In this document: positions 3,302-19,994 of the stretch, piece after piece | Layout of the letters: every line of letters begins with the position of its first letter | Position numbering within the stretch: the first letter of the stretch is position 1 | Assembly: GCA_900088475.1 (NCBI GenBank) | Contig: FLMG01003710.1 | Coordinates: 1 to 64,000, forward strand | Direction: 5' to 3' | Source of the DNA: Hyphochytrium catenoides | Taxonomy: Eukaryota; Protista; Hyphochytriomycota | Length of the DNA: 64,000 nucleotides | Notes under the pieces: model-generated | Told to the model about the DNA's origin: nothing | Databases searched by the model: none | The model's input: only the letters and a program-made list of their open reading frames with translations | Made by a program: the position numbers and the translations under genes

Positions 3302-5179
3302 TTAGAGAAGGTCCCACCAGTGGCGCAACAGAACCGACTTATCAATAGCAATCGCGGCAAAATAGCCTCCCACTAGGGCTCCTGCGTAACCATTGGTCAG
3401 GTTGTCGTGGCCCGTCAGGAAAAGACCTGAGATAGGGGTTCTTGGTCCACAGAGGAGAAACTCTTTGAAGCGAGTAGGAGAGTGCTCCATTCCGTAGCTC
3501 TCTCCCATGAGTGTACCAAGATAGTAGTCGTTCGTGACAGGAGTTCCCACGTCGATGTATGCAATCTTGCCCTCTATTTGAGGCGCAACGTGGAGCACCA
3601 TATCCAGAAGACGAGATCTGTACGTGCTCTTTATGTCATCGTAGTCCTTCCCACGGTGCTTCACCCTACTTTCCCTGTACTTTTGAAACCATTCGTATTC
3701 TGCCATACAGACTGCCAGCGCAACCTCTTTTCTAGGATGCCTGTCTTTATATGTAGGATCCTTAGCAGATGGAAAGGAGACAAAGGCACCAGGAATGGGA
3801 GATGACATATCATTCTCATACGTCCGGTTGTTTCCTTCATGGTCCCAAGAAGGAAAGACCCAGAAGTTCTGTCGCGGAAGGTGAAGGTTTTGTCCGTCTT
3901 CGTTGTTAATCCCAACGAACAAAGAGCAAAGAGATGTCTTCGGCGTCACTTTCTCTAGCAGTGCTCTCTGGTCTTTAATGAGATGGTGGACCGACTGGGG
4001 GAGGAGCTTCTTGTAGGTGTTGACAGCCCCAGCGCCGCTAATGACGATGTTAGAGTAGATCTTTTTCCCCTTCACAATCACTCCTATGGCTGCTCCAGAG
4101 GCCGGATCAACCAAAATCTCAGAAACAGGGGCCCTCACTAGCACTTTCCCGCCATTGGCCTGAATCTTCCGTACTATTGGCTTGCAGATCTCTGCCGGCC
4201 CACCCACAGGGTAGAAGCCGCCACCTACGTAATGTCCGACAATGACCGCGTGATGCATGAAGGACATTCGAGAAGGCGTGATGCCTGAGTTTCCATAGAG
4301 ATAACAAAGAACCCCTAGAAGTTTCTCGTTGTCCGTCAGCTCACTCAAAATCTCTAATGACGTCTTGTCGATGGTTCTGGCAACCATGGGAAAGAGAGCA
4401 CGGAACCACCCTTTCATAACCCTTCCTATAGAGACAGGCAGAAGGCTGAGAGCGAAGTACATCTTCATCTTCTGGTTGACTTCGAGGACAAGAGAGATGT
4501 ACCTTTCAATGGCCTTTCTCTCTTCTGGAAATTGTCGGATGAGGTCTTCCTTAAGATGCTCTGCATTCTTATGCATAGGAAACCTCTCCAGCTCTCTCTC
4601 GCCCTCTTTGCCTTTTCTCATTACCGCTGCCACGTCAAAGTAATCGTCCATAGGGGCCCAGCGTACGCAGTCCTCGTCCGAAATTGCCTTCATCATTTTT
4701 CCAAGAGAAGAAGAAGGATTGCCAATGTCTCCTCCCACATAGTGGATGCCGGTGTCAAATTCATAGCCTCCTCCCTCTTCAAAGGTATGACAATTGCCGC
4801 CTACCACGTCATGCTGCTCGAGAACCAATACTCGGTGCCCTCGTTGAGAGAGAAGGGACGCAGTGGCAAGGCTTCCGATGCCGGAACCGATAACGATAGC
4901 GTCCAGATTATCCGGGACCAACCTCGTACTGAAGCCTTGCTTCATAATGTTCACATCACTCTCTTCCTCCCCCAATCTCTTCCTCTTTCCATCTATCGCT
5001 TCTTCTTTTCTTTTGTTCTTGGAAGATAGGACCTTGGAGACCATGACAATGGAGACAGCAAGGGCGACAGCTGCACTGGCACCTGCCACCGCAGTATGCC
5101 ATGGCTCACTCACATTCCTCAGCCCCATTATCGTAGAGATGGGCTCATAGGAGCCGCCATCTAGAGAGCTCCCACTCAT
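3302..5179 (-). CDS. All-trans-retinol 13,14-reductase (RetSat)-like / phytoene desaturase family FAD oxidoreductase, 625 aa, intronless
   Basis: N-terminal hydrophobic anchor, dinucleotide-binding motif DAIVIGSGIGSL, LEQHDVVGGNCHTF..YEFDTGIHYVG, FVSFPSAKDP, GTPVTNDYYLG..GESYG and TPISGLFLTGHD, as in the RetSat subfamily. Confidence 0.88.
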   Translation of the reverse strand: MSGSSLDGGSYEPISTIMGLRNVSEPWHTAVAGASAAVALAVSIVMVSKVLSSKNKRKEEAIDGKRKRLGEEESDVNIMKQGFSTRLVPDNLDAIVIGSGIGSLATASLLSQRGHRVLVLEQHDVVGGNCHTFEEGGGYEFDTGIHYVGGDIGNPSSSLGKMMKAISDEDCVRWAPMDDYFDVAAVMRKGKEGERELERFPMHKNAEHLKEDLIRQFPEERKAIERYISLVLEVNQKMKMYFALSLLPVSIGRVMKGWFRALFPMVARTIDKTSLEILSELTDNEKLLGVLCYLYGNSGITPSRMSFMHHAVIVGHYVGGGFYPVGGPAEICKPIVRKIQANGGKVLVRAPVSEILVDPASGAAIGVIVKGKKIYSNIVISGAGAVNTYKKLLPQSVHHLIKDQRALLEKVTPKTSLCSLFVGINNEDGQNLHLPRQNFWVFPSWDHEGNNRTYENDMSSPIPGAFVSFPSAKDPTYKDRHPRKEVALAVCMAEYEWFQKYRESRVKHRGKDYDDIKSTYRSRLLDMVLHVAPQIEGKIAYIDVGTPVTNDYYLGTLMGESYGMEHSPTRFKEFLLCGPRTPISGLFLTGHDNLTNGYAGALVGGYFAAIAIDKSVLLRHWWDLL

Positions 5180-10454: not shown

Positions 10455-13400
10455 TTAAGACGAGCTTCCCATTGGTTTCAGTCGAGGAGACTGGTGTTTC
10501 GTCTTGGTACTGCCCAAACCTTTCACGCTCACCGCCGGAAGGGACGTTGACTTAGAAATAGAAGAAAAAGAAGGGATCCCCGGCTGCCGACCGACCGCGG
10601 CCGGACTCTCTACTCTAGTCTGTGGGAGTCCCAATTCTTGAGGATCTTGCGTGAAGTCCCAGAGAGACGGGCTCGGCGAGGCTTGCAAGGCACCTGAGTA
10701 TGTTAGGATCAGAAGGAATACTGATCTGAGCTGGGCTTAGAGAAAACTACATGGTGCAATGACCTAGTAAGGCCCAGTAAGGAAGGTGACGGGCCAGACA
10801 CAATTCCTGGTTCACCAAGCCAGGACTGAACGGATGGGGGTGAAAACGTTCCGTCTGCCCAAGCACGATTTACAGCGAAACGACGTGATTCCGCCCGACC
10901 ACGAAGGCGCCAGCACCCAGTAACGAGGGAACCTTGAGAAGGTAATAAAGATGCCTACCAGAAGACGTTGGGAGGGGCTCTGCTGTACTTTGTGCGTCTT
11001 CTTCTGCCCTCCCCTGTTTCATTGTCCCTCTATAGAGGGGAGACACTTCAAGGCGAGAAGAGCAAAGGGTTGGGGAGGGAGAAGGTTTAGACAGAGCTAA
11101 TAAGGCACCCTGAGCCAATCTGCCTGACTTCTCTTCTTTAGCGATCAAAGTATCATTCTGTTCTTCATGGTTCTACTTTCCTCTTCCACCACCATTCCAC
11201 AGCTGACGTGGTTGATTTATTATTGTACTTACCGGCTGGACCCTTCTCTTTCCCAATGACCCCCTTTCCTCTCCTGGCTGTTAAAGGCCTAAGGCGACAG
11301 TCGATGGAAAGCGTTTTAGCAGGCGTAAAGGCTATTCGTGAAGGAAGGACGGATAAGTTGACACAGACCAAATGCGGCATCCATCCCTTGCGGAGGAAGG
11401 ATGGTGGAACTAGGGGACTGATGCATTCTCAGGAGACGAGTTCGTCAACAGGGAAGAAGCACAAAATAACAGCGTAGATATAAAGGACTTCAAAGCAAAT
11501 AGAATAGGTTGGCAGATGGTGGGAACTGGCAAAGGAGGCATTTTCGGAGACGAGTAGTAAGGCAAGAAGGAAGAGGCAAATGAGTAGCAACATTCTTATC
11601 TTTCCTGTCCTTTGAAGATGCTTGTTAACGACTCTCGTGGGCCTTACCTAGTCCTTGAGCCTTCCCCCAGAGGTGTAAAGTTGATACCAAGGCCGTTAGA
11701 AGCTAGAATGTGCCTTGCTTTAAGCGGATCTACCGCAAGGAGGTTGCGGAAGTAGTCGCAAAAAGACGAGAAAGAAAGAATTCTGGCATCTTTCTCTCTC
11801 CATCCCAGCTTGTTATAGACATTGGAGACCCCTGACGACGAGGAAGCAGTGATATGACGGTCAAGTCTTCGTGTTTCCTCTGGAGAGAGGAAACCATCCA
11901 AATCACTGTCGTACTTGTCAAATATAGTTCTGTCGACAAAGATAGCGACACCTGGTTAGGACCTTTAAAAGCACTCTAGCGTCTTGTTGCCGGTAGTTTC
12001 CCTCTGACACCCCGATTGCTAAAGCCATTCTGTGGCAACCGTGAAGTCCACAGCGCCAAATGTATATGAACGCCAAGCAATGAGGGCTGACGATGGGATA
12101 GACTTATTCTTACCGTATCCCTGCTACAGCTTCACCATTGAGCTTGTCGTCATCTTTAATTGCTCTTGCCCAATCCAGCGTCTGTGCATGGAACCACCTT
12201 CCTTCTTCTGCCCTGTATCATATGACGATAACCACAGAGAGTTACCTTTTAGGGAATCTTGCAGAATGTGATAGTGGCAAGGTCTTACCTCCTATCTCTC
12301 TCTCCGCTTGTCTTCGGGCGAAGTATGGGGACAGCACCCTCCCAAGGCCTTACCGGAGCAACGTTGGTTTCTCCTGACTCCTTTGAAAGAAAATCTTTGG
12401 TTTCTTCTGTCTCTAAAGCGGCCCTTTGTTCCTCATCGATAGTAACTTTATTCCGTTTTGGAGTGTTCTGCACTTTCCTCGCTAACGTAGAGTAGTTCAA
12501 GGTACTCAGCGTCTCATCTAAGACGTATTGAGATGGAGAGACTGTGAGGATGAGTGTCGTGAGGGAGTTTCCTCCAAGACTTTCCTCCAGCAGCCGCTGC
12601 GAAAAGAAGCGAAGGGAACATCATTTCCTGGTGTCAGCGAACCGAAACGTGAAGACTCAGAGAGTCCTGGAAACAAAGGGAGCATCCGCCCAAAGCCGAC
12701 CAGAAGAGAAGGATTGAGAGGTCAACGGAACAGGAAAGATTGAAGATCTCAAAAATTTTCCAGTTCTGTCAAGGCCAACAGGAAGTACCGTGAGCTTGCT
12801 TTCTCTATAGGGTATATGGCCCCACTTATTGACCAGTCCCTGAATCACTCGTCCAAGCGCAAGTAGACCCTGTCCAATGCTCGCAGCCTCTCTCTTTCTT
12901 TCTTTCTTCCCACCAGCGCGCTCAAAGTTTTCCGAGCCACTTAAATCAACCAAGTTCAGTCTTCCTCGTTTCACAATGGTCTGACCTTCGCGAATGACTG
13001 CAGTTAAAGGTAAGGGTCAGAGGAGAAGCAGAGAAAACTCTGAAGCCAGACGCAAAGATCAAATCTCTCTGCCATGGCGTAACGCATACCTCGTGTCTCG
13101 ACAGAGATTGAGAAGATTGAATGCGAGCGGCTTGACACCTAGTGATGGTTTAGAAGATTAAAGAACTAAACGTGGTCTAGATAGATACCCCCATACCTGA
13201 AAACGAATCAGTTAGAGAAGCAAGGAAAAACGGAGATGGACACATAGTAAACCTCGACATACTCTAAAGATATGGCAAGCACAGCTATTATGACAGTCAT
13301 AGTCTTGCAGTGTAGTGCAGAGTTTAGAGGTAAGAAGGCTCTCCTGAGCGCCTCCGTCTTTTACCTTGTTGCATAGAGTCTCTGCCACGTGTCTGCTACG

Positions 13401-16400
13401 GAGGCTTTTCTCCAGAATGGAGAATATCATCGCTGCGTTCGTGACTTCCACCTCTTCTAACCCTTTCACTATTATCCCCTGCACTGGGTCTTTGGTTATC
13501 TGGAGCTTCTTCGGTTTAAAAGTTTCCTTGTTTATCCTCTCCTCGTCCGCTGACGAAGCCCCTGTCTTGTACCTACAACAGGATTAAAGAGGTTAACAGC
13601 AGAGTACGTAGGCATGCTGTTCCAACCAGGCCTTGGTGCTCTGCGCGCTCTCTCTCTCCCTCTTCTAACCCAATCTCCTCTGATTGAGTCAATGGCCGAA
13701 CTGGTGTTACCATGCACTACATAGGAGCTAGTCTCTACCAATGCTTAACTTACTCCACATTTATTCCTCTCTTTCGTGCTGCCATGAAGAGGCTCCTGGA
13801 CGTGGTGGACATCTGCTGTACATTGCCACTACCTTCGCTTTCTTCCAGCAGATCTGTTAGCTCCTCATTATAGATTTCCAAATGTGAAACCTTCACCGTG
13901 TACTCAAAAGAAGATCGTGAGGATGGAGTGTGAGGAAAGGGTTGAGAGGAATTCAGGGTGTCAAAAATGGTGTGGATGCTTCTAGATATTATCCCTGCTC
14001 TTTCTGGATCTCGAATGGACCCTTCCATAGTGTGAGTTTTGCCAGATCCTGTAGCCAGTGAACAGCAGCAGAAGCAACTTTAAATTTTTAATCAGTCGAT
14101 AAGCAGTAGTGCAACTCTTAGTCAGTGAAGAAAGGTCATTTCGGTCCCATACCTGTCTGACCGTAGGCAAAAATGGTGCAGTTGTACCCCTGCAGAGCGG
14201 TAGTTACGATCGACTCCACTTCCTGAGCAGTAAGAGGGAACGGTACGCAGAGGAGTGAATAACCCAAGTGCTCAGCCACCGGAGGTAGTAGACGAGAGAG
14301 GACGAACCAAGGAGAAGATTGTCACTGCGGATACTTGTTATGGAGCCTAAGCGGCTCAGTCACCCACAAAGAAGCAGGTAAGAAGGGCAGTAGTCCCACT
14401 ATCTTACTCTGGATTCAACCTCTCTCTCAACTCACCCTGTAGACTTCGTGCTGGGTCGTGCTAGGTCCAAAGACCCTGTCAAAGGTAAAAGTTCTCCTTG
14501 GTAGATAAGGGGCAGTGGGATCAATCGTTATCTCGGTGCTCGAGGTGCAGGAGAGAACAGATGACGCTCCTAGAGCCTTTTCCTCGTCGAAAAGCGGGCG
14601 GGCTCGAAGAAGGACTCTGATGGGCGTGAGGGAGCCGTCCTGGTCACTCTCAGTATTTATCTATGAAAAGAGCAATATCCCAAAATCTGGTAAGACCGTG
14701 ACTTTGGGTAAGAAGCGGGACATACAAGTAGGGAAAAGAACAAAAATTGTCACCATGTCTTAGAGGGTGGTTGAACGATACTGATCTGAAGCAGTATGGA
14801 GGTAACTGGTGGAAGTGCGAGGTAGCAAAGATGACAAGCTTGAGATGCAGAGAGCGTTTGCAGACAGGAAAATGTGGTTTACCGACGGATCAGTTGAGGA
14901 GAAGGATTTCATCTCTTTGGTCAGTGCAAGGCTCATACGGGTGTAAACCATATCGTCTGCTCTCGAGCGAAGAGTATCTTCTCTCTCTTTCGCTGCGCGT
15001 ATAGCCGCCAACTCTTCTGCCCGTACTCTCCAATCGCCATTGTCAAACTCTTCCTCCGATGGATACGGCGCACCTTGCCCTGAAGAGAAGTTCGAAACGC
15101 CACAAGGGAAAAGATCAGATAAAGCGATGTATGCTAAGGATGGGCAGTAGCAAGTATAAACCGAAGTAGGTCGGTGTCAAAGCTCGCAGACCCTATAAAA
15201 CGGAAGACTGCAGGGAAATGTGCAAGAGTACAGCTCGAACGACACGCTATTCAGCAGATACAGTCCACAGTCATCTCAGACGTACAGGTGTAACATGCTA
15301 AGTCAGCAAACGACCACCACGACGCGGACAAGAACACAATAGGAACTAACCTTCGCCGTGCTTACGGAGGACCATAATCTCTCCTGTTCCCGTGCTAGAG
15401 CAGAAGAAGATATTGCCGTGGTTGTCGAAGACTGCAGAAGTCGCGAAACCCTCAAATAGAACTCTGAGGGGATCTCCTGGCTGAGGTGCTGTGGCCAATG
15501 CTGTGGGTCTTTCGGGACATATAGAGGACGACCCACAACCAGCGAGCAGGATTCTCCCTGAGGGAGAAAGTGAAAGAGATTTAACTGGAGAGAGTCCGAA
15601 ATAGAGCCACTCTGGTCTTCCCCCTTGGTACTCCCATTCCCCGCTTCCGCAATATTCGTCATTGTGCGCAAGAGGTGTTATGATGGAGACAGCACCCACA
15701 AGCCCATAGGGCTCTGTGGGGACTCGAGCGTATGCCAGATATAGTACTCCCCGTGTATCCACCGCAATGTCCTCCGGCACCAAAGATTTGTTGACCAACC
15801 GATGTCCGCTTTGCGTCTGGTCTGTTGCCTCGCTATGTTCATCCTCAAATAGAAACTGAAGAAATGTGATTTTTTCCGGCGCTCTGGCACTACGACTTTG
15901 AAGCGTTGAGGGAGGCAATCCTGCAAGTCTCCAGCTGACGAGAGTTGACCCTCCCTCTCTCCGTCTCATCCTCTCAATAAACATGACAGAATGCGTAGCA
16001 GAGACATGCAGACCAGCAGGGTATGAGAGAGACTGAAGGAGAATATTGAACTCTTTTGTGAGAGAATTATAAGCAGAAAGTCTTCCTCCGTCTTTGCTTG
16101 CCTCTCCCTCTTCGAGAACGTACACGATATGGCCCATGGCTTCAACTCTGGTCGGTCGATGCAAAGCCTCAGCCAGGACTTCATTGCATCTGCTGGCAAG
16201 GTGAAGAACTCCAAAGGTTCCCCCTTGGCAATGCACCCAGTACAGATCTGTTTCTCCATTCGGTGTCATGCTAGCACTTAGACTTGTACAGCCTAACAGC
16301 TCTTTTTCACCCGCAGTCGGCAGTACCCTCTCCACCGAACTCGCGGCCCTCTGTACGGCCTCTGAGCTATTGAGCCATGCCAGTCGTCTTGCATGTTCCT

Positions 16401-16917
16401 CCGTGGAAATGATCGGGATCTCTATACCGGCAGAAGGTCCTAGAGACATTTCTTCTCTCTCTCCCAGTAACCCTCTGTGGTCCTCATACCCCTCGAGCTT
16501 TGCTGACGATGTGTAGGAGGAAAGAGCAAATGAACTGCTCCTACGTTGTTGGTTTTTTACCAGTGCCGCTAGGAGTCCTTGAAGAAGAGGGGGATCATAC
16601 TTCAACCTGGAATCTTTAACTAGCACGAGCTCCAGTGTTACTTCGTCTTCCGTCAGTCGATTCTCTGCTACCTCTTCCACTGCTTGTGCAAGGTCTTGTG
16701 AACCCTTGAGAGATGTAAGCCTCGCCTGTTCTTTGCTGTAGGTATAAATAAGCGGCCAGCTGTCTGAGTAGTCAACAACAGTGCACGCAAAGAGGACACG
16801 TTCCTGGAATGCCGTCCATTCTATGGGATAGGAGACAGCAAGCTTCAAGGCTTGACTTAGCTCTCCCAAAGCATTCAGAGTCTGGACCACCAATGACAAC
16901 TTCTCTATACTCTTCAT
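10455..16917 (-). CDS. Kinesin-5 (BimC/Eg5)-like motor protein with a predicted N-terminal PB1-like plus beta-propeller region and a C-terminal EF-hand; 3' end uncertain (11165 or 10455)
   Basis: Motor exons from 14660 to about 12290 give [100 protein letters not shown] and ETLSTLNYS. The upstream 523-aa ORF joins in phase through GT-AG introns 15350-15080 and 14882-14661. The motor call is secure; the fusion is inferred. Confidence 0.8.
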
Positions 16918-17464
16918 GTCAGCACTTAGGTAGGACTCTCGTGGAGCCCCTCCATGTTGTCGTCCCTCACGAGAGCCAAGCGCAACGATGCTGAACCGCC
17001 TCTCGTTTCAATAAAGCCAGACGCTGGACGTAAAAGTGCTATGCGTAGACTTCAACCGCGCCATCTTCGTATCTGCCCGAAATGAAACCACTGGACTGGA
17101 ACCACTGGACCGCTCCAATGTCGCCCGTTTGGCCCATCGTCCCGCTGCAAATGTCATCTACCTCCCTAGAGCCCATATCAGCTAATCCATCCCAGGCACA
17201 ACTAGCGAGATGCTGCCGCATCGTTGAGTCTGTCTCCAGAGGTATCTGAACCCAGGATGAGTCTCAAGCTCGGGAGGAGCGATAGGGAAGCTTGCTAGCA
17301 GGTGCTGCGGCCGACATCTGCTAGGTCGCTTCTGACAACCTTTTTGTGGGCATCTCTCCTGCAACTTCTGCCAGTTGACCTTTCGCACTTAGTGGAGTTA
17401 CTATACGGCTGGCGCTTTGGTTATCAATAGCAGCTGACCCTTGATTACTGGAAAGCAAGAATGC

Positions 17465-17785: not shown

Positions 17786-19994
17786 ATGGAGCCGATGATG
17801 GAGCCTGAGAGTGAGGGACCAGCGACAAACCATAACTCCAGCCAAGAGTTTAGTGAGGACCTACTGCGCGTGTACTATGGTTCGTGTCTTATTATNNNNN
17901 NNNNNNNNNNNNNNNNNNNNNNNNNNNNNNNNNNNNNNNNNNNNNNNNNNNNNNNCAGATTCGAGCTACTTGCTGCGGAGGGAGTTTTCCTTCACGTTGG
18001 AGCATGACATCTACATTCGTTACAAATCATTCAAGGATAAAGAGGAGCTTGCCGCCCAGATTCAAGCTCTGCAACCCCACAAGATTGACATTGGTGCCGT
18101 TTACAGCCTCTCGGTAAGCTATTCATGAATACTTTAGAGTGATGGACGGTTTGCCTCCATATAGGACACGGCGGTTATGAGAAAGAAGGAAAATCATATT
18201 AACCATACACTCACGATTATTTCTGAGCAGCCTCGGGATCATGACAAGATCAACCCGTCAGAGTTTGTCCCTTTGGAACGTGAGCTTGTCTTTGACATTG
18301 ACATGACTGACTACGATAGCGTCCGGACCTGCTGTGAGGGTGCCAACATCTGCACGAAGTGCTGGTCGTTTATGACAGCTGCAATAAAAGTTCTTGACGT
18401 GGCCCTGAGAGGTAAGTGAGCTTTGCGGCCGCGATCTACCCCATGTTATGTTAGATTCTGTTCAGGCCCACCAGTACTGACTACTGTTTCCCTTCTCCCG
18501 ACATGCAGATGACTTCGGTTTCCAGCATGTCCTGTGGGTTTATAGCGGTAGAAGAGGAGTCCACTGCTGGGTCTGCGATGAGATCGCAAGAGGGTTAACC
18601 AACGAGGCGAGGGAAGCTGTGGTGCAGTATCTTACAGTTTACCAGGTTAGATCCTATCGTCTTTCTTGCTCGCGCGAGTCCTTACTGTCCCGCATAGGGG
18701 GAGGGCAACAACTCGCGGTACCTTGGGTATCCACTGCATCCGTCCTTAAGGTATGTCTACTTTCTTTCAGATCACTCCATATACTGATACTCTGCATCCA
18801 GTCGCGCCTTTGAGATATTGGAGCCACTCTTTGTGGAGTGGATTGTCTCTGAGAAGGGCCAGGCTCTGCTCTGCACTCCAGAGGGCTGGGCGAAGGTACT
18901 CAATAGAATCCCTGACCCTGGTAAGTTATCATCATCTGCAGTCGTCTAAAGTGTAAAGCGGGGATAATCACAATCTCCTCTACTCACGCACACTCTGTTC
19001 GCGCTACATTGCGTTATTCGTTAGCAATCGCTGCTAGTCTAGACGAGAGCTGGAAGTCAAGCAAGTGTAAGCTTTCTCCCGAAGAGAAATGGGAGCAGCT
19101 AAAATCCACGATACGGTCTGTAGAGAGCCAGAGCAAGGCGAAGAAAATGAAGGTATTCTGATCCCCTTCTTTGGCTCACGTCAGCAAACTTGAAGCGCAT
19201 TTACAACCTCGTTCTACTGCTCCGCATGTCGCGGGCACTGCAATCCGCAATCTCGTCTTACCACCGATCAGGTAGACAAGACAACATCAAGAAAGCTACA
19301 TACATTTATTGAAGAGTTAGTGTTCTACTACATGTATCCGAGGCTGGATGAGAACGTTTCCAAGCACCGGAACCATCTTTTGAAAGCTCCCTTTGCTGTC
19401 CATCCAAAGACAGGTGGAGCTAGCTCGTTAGACTCTCTATCTCTTGGTTAGGTCTCCCCGCTGTGTCCATTACATGCTGTTTCTGTCCTTCGGAAACTCT
19501 ATACACTATTCCTCCTGAGTGGTCTTACCATCTTGTTTCTATTATCAGGCCGTGTGTGTGTGCCGATCAAGGCGGGAAGTGTCGATCAATTCAAGCCCTT
19601 TCAAGTGCCTACTCTGGCACGATTGGTGGCCGAACTGGATGACTTCAATAACTCTAACGCTGACCCATTATCGAAAGACTCAGAAGGTACACACAAGAGA
19701 AGCTTATGACCGACACAGCGCTAGGTGGCAATTACGCTGTATGAAAGGCGATTGCATTTGACTACCGGTGTGCCCCTTACAATTCTGTCATCGTCAGATT
19801 GGGAAAAGACTAGCCTAAGGCCGTCCGTGCAAATCTTTTTGGACTTTTATCGCAAGGTCCGTTCCAGCGTCCTCAAGACTGTAAAGGAGGAGAAAGAAAG
19901 TGAGTGTATTGTACCCCTTTGCCACGCTGTGTTTGCGTCTGCTGATAGCGGCCCTGTATTTCCAGGAGCAGCTGCAGTTACTGGGGATTGGTGA
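17786..19994 (+). CDS. PRIM1: DNA primase small (catalytic) subunit, multi-exon; an N gap at 17896-17954 interrupts the first intron region
   Basis: [79 protein letters not shown] and [32 protein letters not shown]. Stop TGA at 19992-19994. Confidence 0.95.

What the first reader, a model, noticed from the sequence alone, without database searches (positions are those of the whole stretch)
14661..16917. Kinesin-5-like motor apparently fused to an N-terminal PB1-like plus beta-propeller module
Seen in sequence: the 523-aa ORF (16917-15346) has a phase-1 donor (GAAG|GTTAGT at 15350) that splices in frame to exon 15079-14883 ([12 protein letters not shown]...SSTDPS). That exon's phase-0 donor (TCG|GTAAAC) opens a 222-nt pyrimidine-rich intron ending CTTTTCATAG at 14661, directly before [22 protein letters not shown], the first motor strand. 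No standalone start or promoter space is evident for the motor. Inference: the first ~100 aa resemble a PB1/ubiquitin-like fold ([28 protein letters not shown]). Residues ~220-520 have NHL/SMP-30-style blade repeats ([43 protein letters not shown]). Established: canonical kinesin-5 has an N-terminal motor without such cargo-like domains, so a central motor behind about 590 aa of scaffold would be an architecture I do not recognise.
Basis: partly seen in the sequence, partly recalled or inferred. Interest (0 to 1): 0.8.

Follow-up and report, generated by a model that had tools for sequence, protein, structure and literature searches.

The report
Propeller-headed kinesin-5-like motor gene
This is one 11-exon gene for a roughly 1,170-residue microtubule motor that carries a six-bladed beta-propeller in front of a kinesin-5-like engine, a design that recurs in other eukaryotes but which I could not find described in the literature.

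Summary
The 523-aa ORF, the 197-nt linker exon and the first motor exon join in frame exactly as described. No RNA data could be found, so the support is comparative. A relative at about 50% protein identity (L001) has the same 11 exons. All 10 intron positions and phases match, including both contested introns. The linker is under purifying selection and has no upstream ATG of its own. In two other organisms (P0003, P0009) the propeller and the motor lie in one uninterrupted ORF. At least 14 proteins share the design, including Achlya hypogyna ACHHYP_02207.

The N-terminal module is a six-bladed NHL/YWTD/lactonase-type propeller (AF2 pLDDT 80, pTM 0.84). The "PB1-like" first 100 aa rest only on a weak language-model lead.

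The motor is most similar to kinesin-5. It sits in its own clade (100/100) with a 40-80 aa insert and a DLSGSE switch II. It lacks the kinesin-5 stalk and tail, and it ends in a short tail with one EF-hand.

I read it as a new, conserved variant of the kinesin superfamily. I found no publication describing it. The scan had already noted the EF-hand tail on this window (s1-342048).

The parts
15351..16917 (-). Exon 1 (aa 1-522). It holds the start ATG at 16917-16915, an N-terminal domain (aa 1 to about 100), a poorly conserved spacer (about 100-195) and a six-bladed beta-propeller (about 200-520). It ends at the phase-1 donor GAAG|GTTAGT.
   Evidence: ORF. The start M-[KD]-S-I-x-x-L is conserved in L001. 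For the propeller: profile against PDB, AF2 model with pLDDT 80, Foldseek.
15080..15350 (-). Intron 1 (271 nt, GT..AG, 63% pyrimidine). It contains the ORF's TAG stop at 15348-15346.
   Evidence: The homologous 60-nt phase-1 intron in L001 (1856-1915) contains that ORF's TGA.
14883..15079 (-). Exon 2, the linker (aa 523-588). It contains a conserved, probably helical segment DW..AEE..KERED..SRADD..RMS.ALT.EMK.
   Evidence: Against L001: 67% aa identity, pN 0.22 and synonymous sites saturated. There is no in-frame ATG upstream of the conserved part. In L001 it lies in the same open frame as motor exon 1.
14661..14882 (-). Intron 2 (222 nt, GTAAAC..CATAG, phase 0).
   Evidence: In both species it lies exactly 12 codons before P-I-[RK]-V-L-L (L001 intron 2110-2184).
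12789..14660 (-). Motor exons 3-8 (14660-14436, 14222-14153, 14048-13754, 13572-13365, 13138-13090, 12997-12789). They carry the P-loop GQTGSGKT, switch I SSRSH, switch II DLSGSE, and a roughly 45-aa family-specific insert (TTS.SL..A.KRGI..EY).
   Evidence: Pfam Kinesin hits on the exons. Spliced model. Alignment to family members and to kinesin-5.
12289..12596 (-). Exon 9: the end of the motor (L12/alpha5/alpha6), a kinesin-5-like neck-linker stretch (NTPKRNK) and the start of the tail with a conserved PWEGAVP motif.
   Evidence: The tail is conserved across the family.
11644..12212 (-). Exons 10-11 (12212-12114, 11929-11644): the C-terminal tail with one canonical EF-hand loop ([12 protein letters not shown]). 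The stop TAA is at 11646-11644.
   Evidence: Pfam EF-hand at E 2e-3 in the window, above the gathering score in L001.

Best explanation
Window 16917-11644 (minus strand) is a single 11-exon gene for a protein of about 1,170 aa. The order of parts is:
- an N-terminal domain of unresolved fold (aa 1 to about 100)
- a spacer
- a six-bladed NHL/YWTD/lactonase-type beta-propeller (about 200-520)
- a conserved linker of about 75 aa
- a catalytically intact kinesin-5-like motor with a family-specific loop insert (about 600-990)
- a tail of about 180 aa with one EF-hand

Shown here: the gene structure, the propeller fold, the motor's affinity to kinesin-5, and membership of a conserved clade of 'propeller-kinesins' that is distinct from canonical kinesin-5.

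Inferred: it works as a plus-end-directed motor, because the N-type neck-linker after alpha6 is retained. It cannot form the bipolar kinesin-5 tetramer, because it has no stalk and no BASS region. Instead it would couple whatever the propeller binds (a protein, or possibly RNA as in NHL domains) to microtubules. The EF-hand tail could make this calcium-sensitive.
For: 1. The in-frame splice path is verified.
2. L001 is a contig from another organism. Its full model is 50% identical to the window model in one HSP, aa 95-1160. It has the same 11 exons, and all 10 intron positions and phases are identical. Its introns are 53-75 nt, and the 60-nt intron 1 removes the only stop between propeller and linker.
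3. Linker and motor exon 1 form one open frame in L001.
4. The linker is coding: pN 0.22, pS saturated. The window has no ATG between the upstream stop and the conserved segment.
5. P0003 (1182 aa) and P0009 (1931 aa) are single uninterrupted ORFs holding both propeller and kinesin. The window model aligns to P0003 in one HSP, aa 445-987 (43% identity, E 5e-118), which crosses both contested junctions.
6. Eleven more proteins share the propeller plus motor: P0004, P0006, P0052-P0059 and Achlya P0115. The tail is also conserved.
7. Propeller fold.
8. Motor: kinesin-5 proteins are the nearest named hits and the nearest solved structures. The family forms its own clade at 100/100 support. Catalytic motifs are intact.
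Against: No transcript evidence of any kind. No RNA run was listed, and the reads tool returned DNA contigs only. The donors of intron 1 (GTTAGT) and intron 2 (GTAAAC) are not the strongest in the gene. A conserved in-frame ATG in the linker (R-M-S-[LV]-A-L-T) could start a shorter, motor-only isoform from an internal promoter. The functional part (directionality, cargo binding, calcium control) is inference from domain content alone.
Confidence: 0.9

Rival explanations
1. Two adjacent genes. The propeller protein ends at the TAG (15348-15346). The kinesin is transcribed separately and starts at the conserved linker ATG (R-M-S) or at a tiny ATG exon such as 14756-14754.
For: The 523-aa ORF is a complete ATG-to-stop ORF. 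An in-frame ATG is conserved in the linker of both species. No RNA data exclude this reading.
Against: - 27 conserved linker codons lie upstream of the first ATG and are under purifying selection.
- In L001 only 30 nt and one TGA separate the two frames, which leaves no room for a promoter.
- The ATG|GT mini-exon is not conserved in L001.
- Single-ORF orthologues exist.
- Intron 1 is conserved in phase and in approximate position.
Confidence: 0.05
2. Both forms are made: the full fusion, plus a shorter motor-only (or propeller-only) isoform produced by an internal promoter or by intron retention.
For: There is a conserved internal ATG in the linker. L001 introns 1 and 2 are multiples of three (60 and 75 nt), and intron 2 has no stop, so retaining it would keep the frame.
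Against: There is no positive evidence. The intron lengths could be coincidence. In the window, retaining intron 2 runs into a TAA at 14762-14760.
Confidence: 0.12
3. Assembly artefact: the propeller gene and the kinesin gene were joined by a scaffolding error.
For: The window contains short N runs elsewhere (393-425 and 17896-17955).
Against: There is no gap inside 11600-17000. Independent DNA contigs cover the junction regions (X1 record 15012-15489). The same order is found on an unrelated contig (L001) and within single ORFs in L002 and L003.
Confidence: 0.01

Closest known systems
Kinesin-5 (Eg5/KIF11, Klp61F, BimC, plant KIN-5A-D)
   Same: The motor core is most similar to kinesin-5. Against solved structures: KIF11 296 bits, Klp61F 259, then kinesin-2 KIF3B 244 and KIF4 230. 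All nearest named database proteins are kinesin-5, at 43-46% identity. It also shares EIYNEEL.DLL..LGRVI.. and a neck-linker-like N.P..N stretch after alpha6.
   Different: - The motor is internal, starting at about aa 600 rather than at the N-terminus.
- There is no long coiled-coil stalk or BASS region, and no kinesin-5 tail domain (PF13931 is not hit).
- Loop L5 is short.
- A 40-80 aa insert follows beta4.
- Switch II reads DLSGSE instead of DLAGSE.
- The family lies on the far side of a 100/100 branch from 36-38 canonical kinesin-5 motors.
- Oomycetes have both kinds, so this is a paralogue and not the organism's spindle kinesin-5.
Unannotated 'propeller-kinesins' in public data, e.g. Achlya hypogyna ACHHYP_02207 (P0115), P0003, P0009, P0052-P0059
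   Same: They share the three-part design: N-terminal six-bladed propeller, kinesin-5-like motor with the TTS..KRGI insert, and conserved tail motifs. The window protein groups with L001 and Achlya at 99/87 support.
   Different: The window and L001 carry an extra N-terminal domain of about 100 aa and a recognisable EF-hand, which were not detected in the others. Lengths range from 987 to 1931 aa. Sources name them only 'hypothetical' or 'kinesin motor domain-containing'.
Kinesin-4 KIF21A/B (motor plus WD40 propeller)
   Same: It is a kinesin joined to a beta-propeller that acts as a binding or regulatory module. KISc-WD40 is the only propeller architecture listed in Wickstead et al. 2010 (PMC2867816).
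   Different: In KIF21 the propeller is a seven-bladed WD40 at the C-terminus, behind a coiled-coil stalk, and the motor is kinesin-4. Here the propeller is six-bladed, of NHL/YWTD type, and N-terminal to the motor.
Six-bladed NHL / YWTD (LDL-receptor class B) / SGL-lactonase propellers
   Same: The family profile hits the LRP4/LRP2/LRP6 YWTD propellers (E 1e-35 to 1e-13) and the PknD-derived Pizza proteins. The AF2 model has 24 strands in 6 blades and aligns to Pizza6, Drp35, the RPA3624 lactonase, PknD and the Mei-P26 NHL domain (TM 0.6-0.77 by target).
   Different: No Pfam model reaches its gathering score (Str_synth 19.4 bits against a cut-off of 25). Sequence identity to solved propellers is 10-16%. 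Nothing shows lactonase catalytic residues or any ligand.

Membership tests
Kinesin superfamily | Motor domain matching PF00225 with P-loop GQTGxGKT, switch I SSRSH and switch II DxxGxE | tested here: met
   Pfam Kinesin hits on four exons. The spliced model shows GQTGSGKT, SSRSH, DLSGSE and [10 protein letters not shown].
Kinesin-5 | Motor sequence closest to kinesin-5 among kinesin families | tested here: met
   KIF11 scores 296 bits against 244 for the best non-kinesin-5 structure. All nearest named proteins are KIN-5, KIF11 or Klp61F.
Kinesin-5 | Falls inside the kinesin-5 clade in a superfamily phylogeny | tested here: inconclusive
   The 14 propeller-family motors are separated from 36-38 canonical kinesin-5 motors by a 100/100 branch. 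No other kinesin families were available as outgroup, so sister versus nested versus separate family is unresolved.
Kinesin-5 | N-terminal motor followed by a long coiled-coil stalk with a BASS domain (bipolar homotetramer) | tested here: not met
   The motor starts at about aa 600. Only about 180 aa follow it, and these hold an EF-hand. Canonical kinesin-5 hits have about 650 aa after the motor. No coiled-coil predictor was run.
Kinesin-5 | C-terminal tail domain / BimC box (PF13931) | tested here: not met
   No PF13931 hit in the window's last exon or in six full-length family members. It is present in the Klp61F hit P0065.
Six-bladed beta-propeller (NHL/YWTD/SGL clan) | Six four-stranded blades, with structural and profile similarity to solved members | tested here: met
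   AF2 gave pLDDT 80.3, pTM 0.84 and 24 strands. Foldseek probability is 1.0 to Pizza6, Drp35, PknD and Mei-P26 NHL. Profile hits to LRP4/2/6 and PknD.
Six-bladed beta-propeller (NHL/YWTD/SGL clan) | Reaches the gathering score of a Pfam family of the clan | tested here: not met
   Str_synth 19.4 bits (cut-off 25) and SSL_N 14.6 bits (cut-off 18.9). The more distant homologue P0012 does pass Str_synth (27.6 bits).
PB1 / ubiquitin-like beta-grasp (aa 1-100) | Profile match to PF00564, or a confident beta-grasp model | tested here: inconclusive
   No PB1 hit at E<=10. The AF2 model of this part has pLDDT about 26-30. Atlas features score 0.92 to unnamed clusters whose predicted model resembles PB1 domains, and weaker rows are all beta-grasp families. 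That is a lead only.
EF-hand | 12-residue DxDxDG...E calcium loop, with a Pfam EF-hand match | tested here: met
   The loops are [12 protein letters not shown] (window) and DKNNDGVLTAEE (L001). L001 passes the EF-hand_1 and EF-hand_6 gathering scores. The window scores E 2e-3 to 7e-3, below the cut-off.

The most novel reading that the evidence does not exclude
The window protein belongs to an undescribed, widely distributed kinesin family. The family would be a paralogue derived from, or sister to, kinesin-5, present at least in a probable chytrid fungus and in oomycetes. It is defined by an N-terminal six-bladed propeller, an internal motor with a conserved loop insert, and a DLSGSE switch II. 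It would have exchanged the bipolar spindle-sliding design for a cargo- or partner-binding head. It may be old enough to predate the split of opisthokonts and stramenopiles.
Probability: 0.55. Interest if true: 0.7.

Novelty: new variant of a known kind. Interest (0 to 1): 0.6.

Why it matters
Kinesin classification and function prediction lean on motor phylogeny plus tail architecture. Pfam does not see this propeller, so the proteins are currently filed as 'kinesin motor domain-containing' or are likely to be mistaken for kinesin-5. That would mislead inventories of spindle motors in chytrids, oomycetes and environmental protists.

A conserved clade that keeps a kinesin-5-like engine but replaces the tetramerising stalk with an N-terminal propeller is a natural experiment in how motor modules are re-used. 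It offers a testable candidate for a calcium-sensitive, partner-specific microtubule motor in zoosporic organisms.

For genome annotation, it shows that the 523-aa ORF should not be called as a separate gene.

Tried and rejected
- **RNA evidence.** Two run searches listed no RNA run. The three unlabelled runs of the same species held nothing from this locus, and the fourth is DNA.
- **First structure prediction.** The whole 523-aa ORF with a 2-sequence alignment was unusable (pLDDT 35). Only the second job, with 23 sequences restricted to the propeller, worked.
- **Word-indexed search with the 523-aa ORF.** It found only one homologue because of its length filter. The exhaustive profile search was needed to find the fusions.
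- **The window genome's own annotated protein.** It was not in either protein collection, so no existing gene model could be consulted.
- **AFDB cluster search with the propeller.** It returned only generic propellers.
- **The 'ATG-only exon at 14756-14754' idea.** Rejected, because it is not conserved in L001 and would leave the conserved linker untranslated.
- **Literature.** Four searches, plus the text and supplements of Wickstead et al. 2010, gave no description of an N-terminal propeller kinesin. Absence from this library is not proof.
- **Superfamily-wide phylogeny.** It could not be built, because no reference sequences of other kinesin families could be obtained.
Full report
**1. Observation**

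On the minus strand, the 523-aa ORF 16917-15346 can be left at GAAG|GTTAGT, with the last exon base at 15351 in phase 1. It joins a 197-nt exon, 15079-14883. That exon is left at TCG|GTAAAC in phase 0. A 222-nt intron (14882-14661, 65% pyrimidine) ends CTTTTCATAG, directly before [22 protein letters not shown], the start of the kinesin motor. The joined frame is open. The only correction is that motor exon 1 ends at 14436. An in-frame GT..AG path is not improbable by chance, so the case had to be made with other evidence.

**2. No RNA**

Neither run search listed an RNA run. The one reads call returned only DNA contigs of the same organism. These reproduce the sequence across exon 1, intron 1 and exon 2 (15012-15489), including the stop codon, and show allele-like variants but no joints. 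The argument is therefore comparative.

**3. A relative with the same gene**

The word-indexed search found one homologue of the ORF: P0001, 41% identical, on Logan contig L001. L001 holds, in the same order and on the same strand, the N-terminal piece, the propeller ORF, the linker and the kinesin.

- In L001 the linker and the first motor exon lie in one open frame (1900-2418).
- The propeller ORF and that frame are in the same register. Only one TGA (1867-1869) separates them.
- That TGA sits inside a 60-nt GT..AG interval (1856-1915), in phase 1 like the window's intron 1.
- I built both gene models. Each has 11 exons, and all ten introns have the same phase (1,0,0,1,2,0,1,0,2,2). Eight lie at the same alignment position. 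Intron 1 lies within two codons, in a poorly conserved stretch of equal length. Intron 2 lies exactly 12 codons before P-I-[RK]-V-L-L in both.
- L001 introns are 53-75 nt, so the 60-nt intron 1 is typical there. Window introns are 76-271 nt.
- The two full models align in one HSP (aa 95-1160 against 40-1065, 50% identity).

**4. The linker is coding and cannot start on its own**

Over the 43 codons from DW to EMK, the two species are 67% identical in protein but only 60% in DNA. pN is 0.22 and synonymous sites are saturated. In the window, the linker frame is open upstream only to TGA 15179-15177 and contains no ATG before the conserved segment. In L001 the only ATG upstream of the conserved R-M-S lies inside the conserved segment. 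So 27 or more conserved codons need an upstream exon, and the propeller ORF is the only candidate.

**5. Single-ORF orthologues**

A profile of the ORF, searched exhaustively against 1.84 billion representatives, gave 28 hits. Several of these are long proteins with a kinesin motor downstream of the matched region: P0003, P0004, P0006 and P0009. P0003 (1182 aa) and P0009 (1931 aa) are each encoded by one uninterrupted ORF on their contigs (L003 5001-8549 and L002 257-6052). The spliced window model aligns to P0003 in a single HSP, aa 445-987 against 612-1164 (43% identity, E 5e-118). That HSP runs through both contested junctions, at aa 522/523 and 588/589.

A search with the P0003 motor brought in more members. 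These are P0052-P0059 (1038-1686 aa), including the EukProt protein P0058, and Achlya hypogyna ACHHYP_02207 (P0115). All of them hit the propeller profile. The tail after the motor is conserved as well. I therefore put the fusion at about 0.9. The remaining doubt is the lack of transcripts and the possibility of additional shorter isoforms.

**6. The N-terminal module**

With a 23-sequence alignment, AF2 gave a confident model of aa 195-523: pLDDT 80.3, pTM 0.84, 24 strands in six blades. Foldseek matches six-bladed propellers: Pizza6/PknD, Drp35, the RPA3624 lactonase and the Mei-P26 NHL domain (probability 1.0, TM up to 0.77 by target). The family profile hits the YWTD propellers of LRP4/LRP2/LRP6 and PknD in the PDB. 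Pfam stays below threshold (Str_synth 19.4 bits against 25), which explains why the domain is unannotated.

The first 100 aa are conserved only in L001. They have no Pfam PB1 match even at E<=10 and no usable model. A language-model feature search points to beta-grasp/PB1-like clusters. That is a lead, not a test.

**7. The motor**

The catalytic and microtubule-binding motifs are intact: GQTGSGKT, SSRSH, DLSGSE and [10 protein letters not shown]. The nearest solved structures are kinesin-5: KIF11 296 bits and Klp61F 259, against KIF3B 244 and KIF4 230. All nearest named proteins are also kinesin-5.

In ML trees, the 14 family motors sit on one side of a branch with 100% UFBoot and 100% SH-aLRT support, against 36-38 canonical kinesin-5 motors from plants, green algae, oomycetes, a cryptophyte and others. 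Columns of the family insert were excluded by the 50% fill filter. Oomycetes contribute to both sides, so the family is a paralogue.

Shared derived features of the family:
- a 40-80 aa insert after EIYNEEL.DLL with a TTS.aL..A..rGI motif
- Ser instead of Ala in switch II
- [10 protein letters not shown]
- a short L5 loop (the statement that kinesin-5 has a long L5 rests on my own knowledge and on the canonical rows)

The stalk, BASS region and tail that define kinesin-5 function are absent. About 180 aa follow the motor. They contain a conserved PWEG motif and one canonical EF-hand loop, which is above the Pfam threshold in L001 and below it in the window. Without other kinesin families as outgroup, I cannot say whether the clade is nested in kinesin-5, sister to it, or separate.

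**8. Mechanism (inferred)**

The neck-linker-like stretch after alpha6 suggests plus-end-directed movement. The absence of a stalk excludes the bipolar tetramer. The propeller is the obvious partner-binding surface, since YWTD and NHL propellers bind proteins and some NHL domains bind RNA (established knowledge). The conserved charged linker helix may dimerise the protein or position the propeller near the cover-strand region. The EF-hand could confer calcium sensitivity. None of this was tested.

**9. Context and novelty**

A neighbouring single-exon gene (3302-5179) has its clear best hit in Chytridiales sp. JEL 0842, at 53% identity. Other notes on this genome mention ciliary proteins. The organism is therefore probably a zoosporic fungus, but this rests on one gene.

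Wickstead et al. 2010 (PMC2867816) catalogued 105 kinesin architectures. The only propeller among them is the C-terminal WD40 of kinesin-4/10. Four full-text searches found no description of this design. The proteins do exist in public databases as 'hypothetical' or 'kinesin motor domain-containing'. I therefore class the finding as a new variant of a known kind: a conserved, apparently undescribed kinesin subfamily and architecture, not a one-off fusion.

Noticed in passing
L001:500-580: In the relative's gene, the N-terminal piece (342-512, 46% identical to window aa 1-57) and the rest of the ORF are in different frames. The shift lies near a C5 run (about 541-545), and no GT..AG interval explains it. 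It is either a one-base assembly error in the Logan contig or a real frameshift.
   Followed up: partly
L001:1856-1915 and 2110-2184: The relative's introns 1 and 2 are 60 and 75 nt, both multiples of three. Intron 2 has no stop codon, so retaining it would keep the frame and add 25 residues. This could be coincidence or a retained-intron isoform.
   Followed up: no
window 3302-5179 (-): A single-exon 625-aa FAD amine-oxidase / retinol-saturase-like gene. Its clear best hit is Chytridiales sp. JEL 0842 (53% identity, E 2e-204), followed by diatoms and oomycetes at 41-46%. This suggests the window comes from a chytrid-like zoosporic fungus.
   Followed up: partly
window 14050-14305: DNA run X1 holds two contigs over this stretch at similar depth, one identical and one with 11 differences plus an indel. 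Many single-contig differences occur elsewhere in the gene. The pattern looks like two haplotypes or strains.
   Followed up: no
window 17800-18420 (+): Exon-like ORFs resembling the DNA primase small subunit (motif [10 protein letters not shown]) lie just upstream of the kinesin gene on the other strand. They are interrupted by a 60-N gap at 17896-17955.
   Followed up: no
window 13572-13754 and family alignment: All propeller-kinesins carry a 40-80 aa insert in the motor with a conserved TTS.aL..A..rGI..Y motif. They also have Ser in switch II (DLSGSE). Both are useful diagnostic markers. The role of the insert is unknown.
   Followed up: partly
runs X4, X5: A soil metagenome and a root metagenome each hold 6-7% of the sampled words of the propeller ORF. 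This suggests the organism or a close relative lives in soil or the rhizosphere.
   Followed up: no
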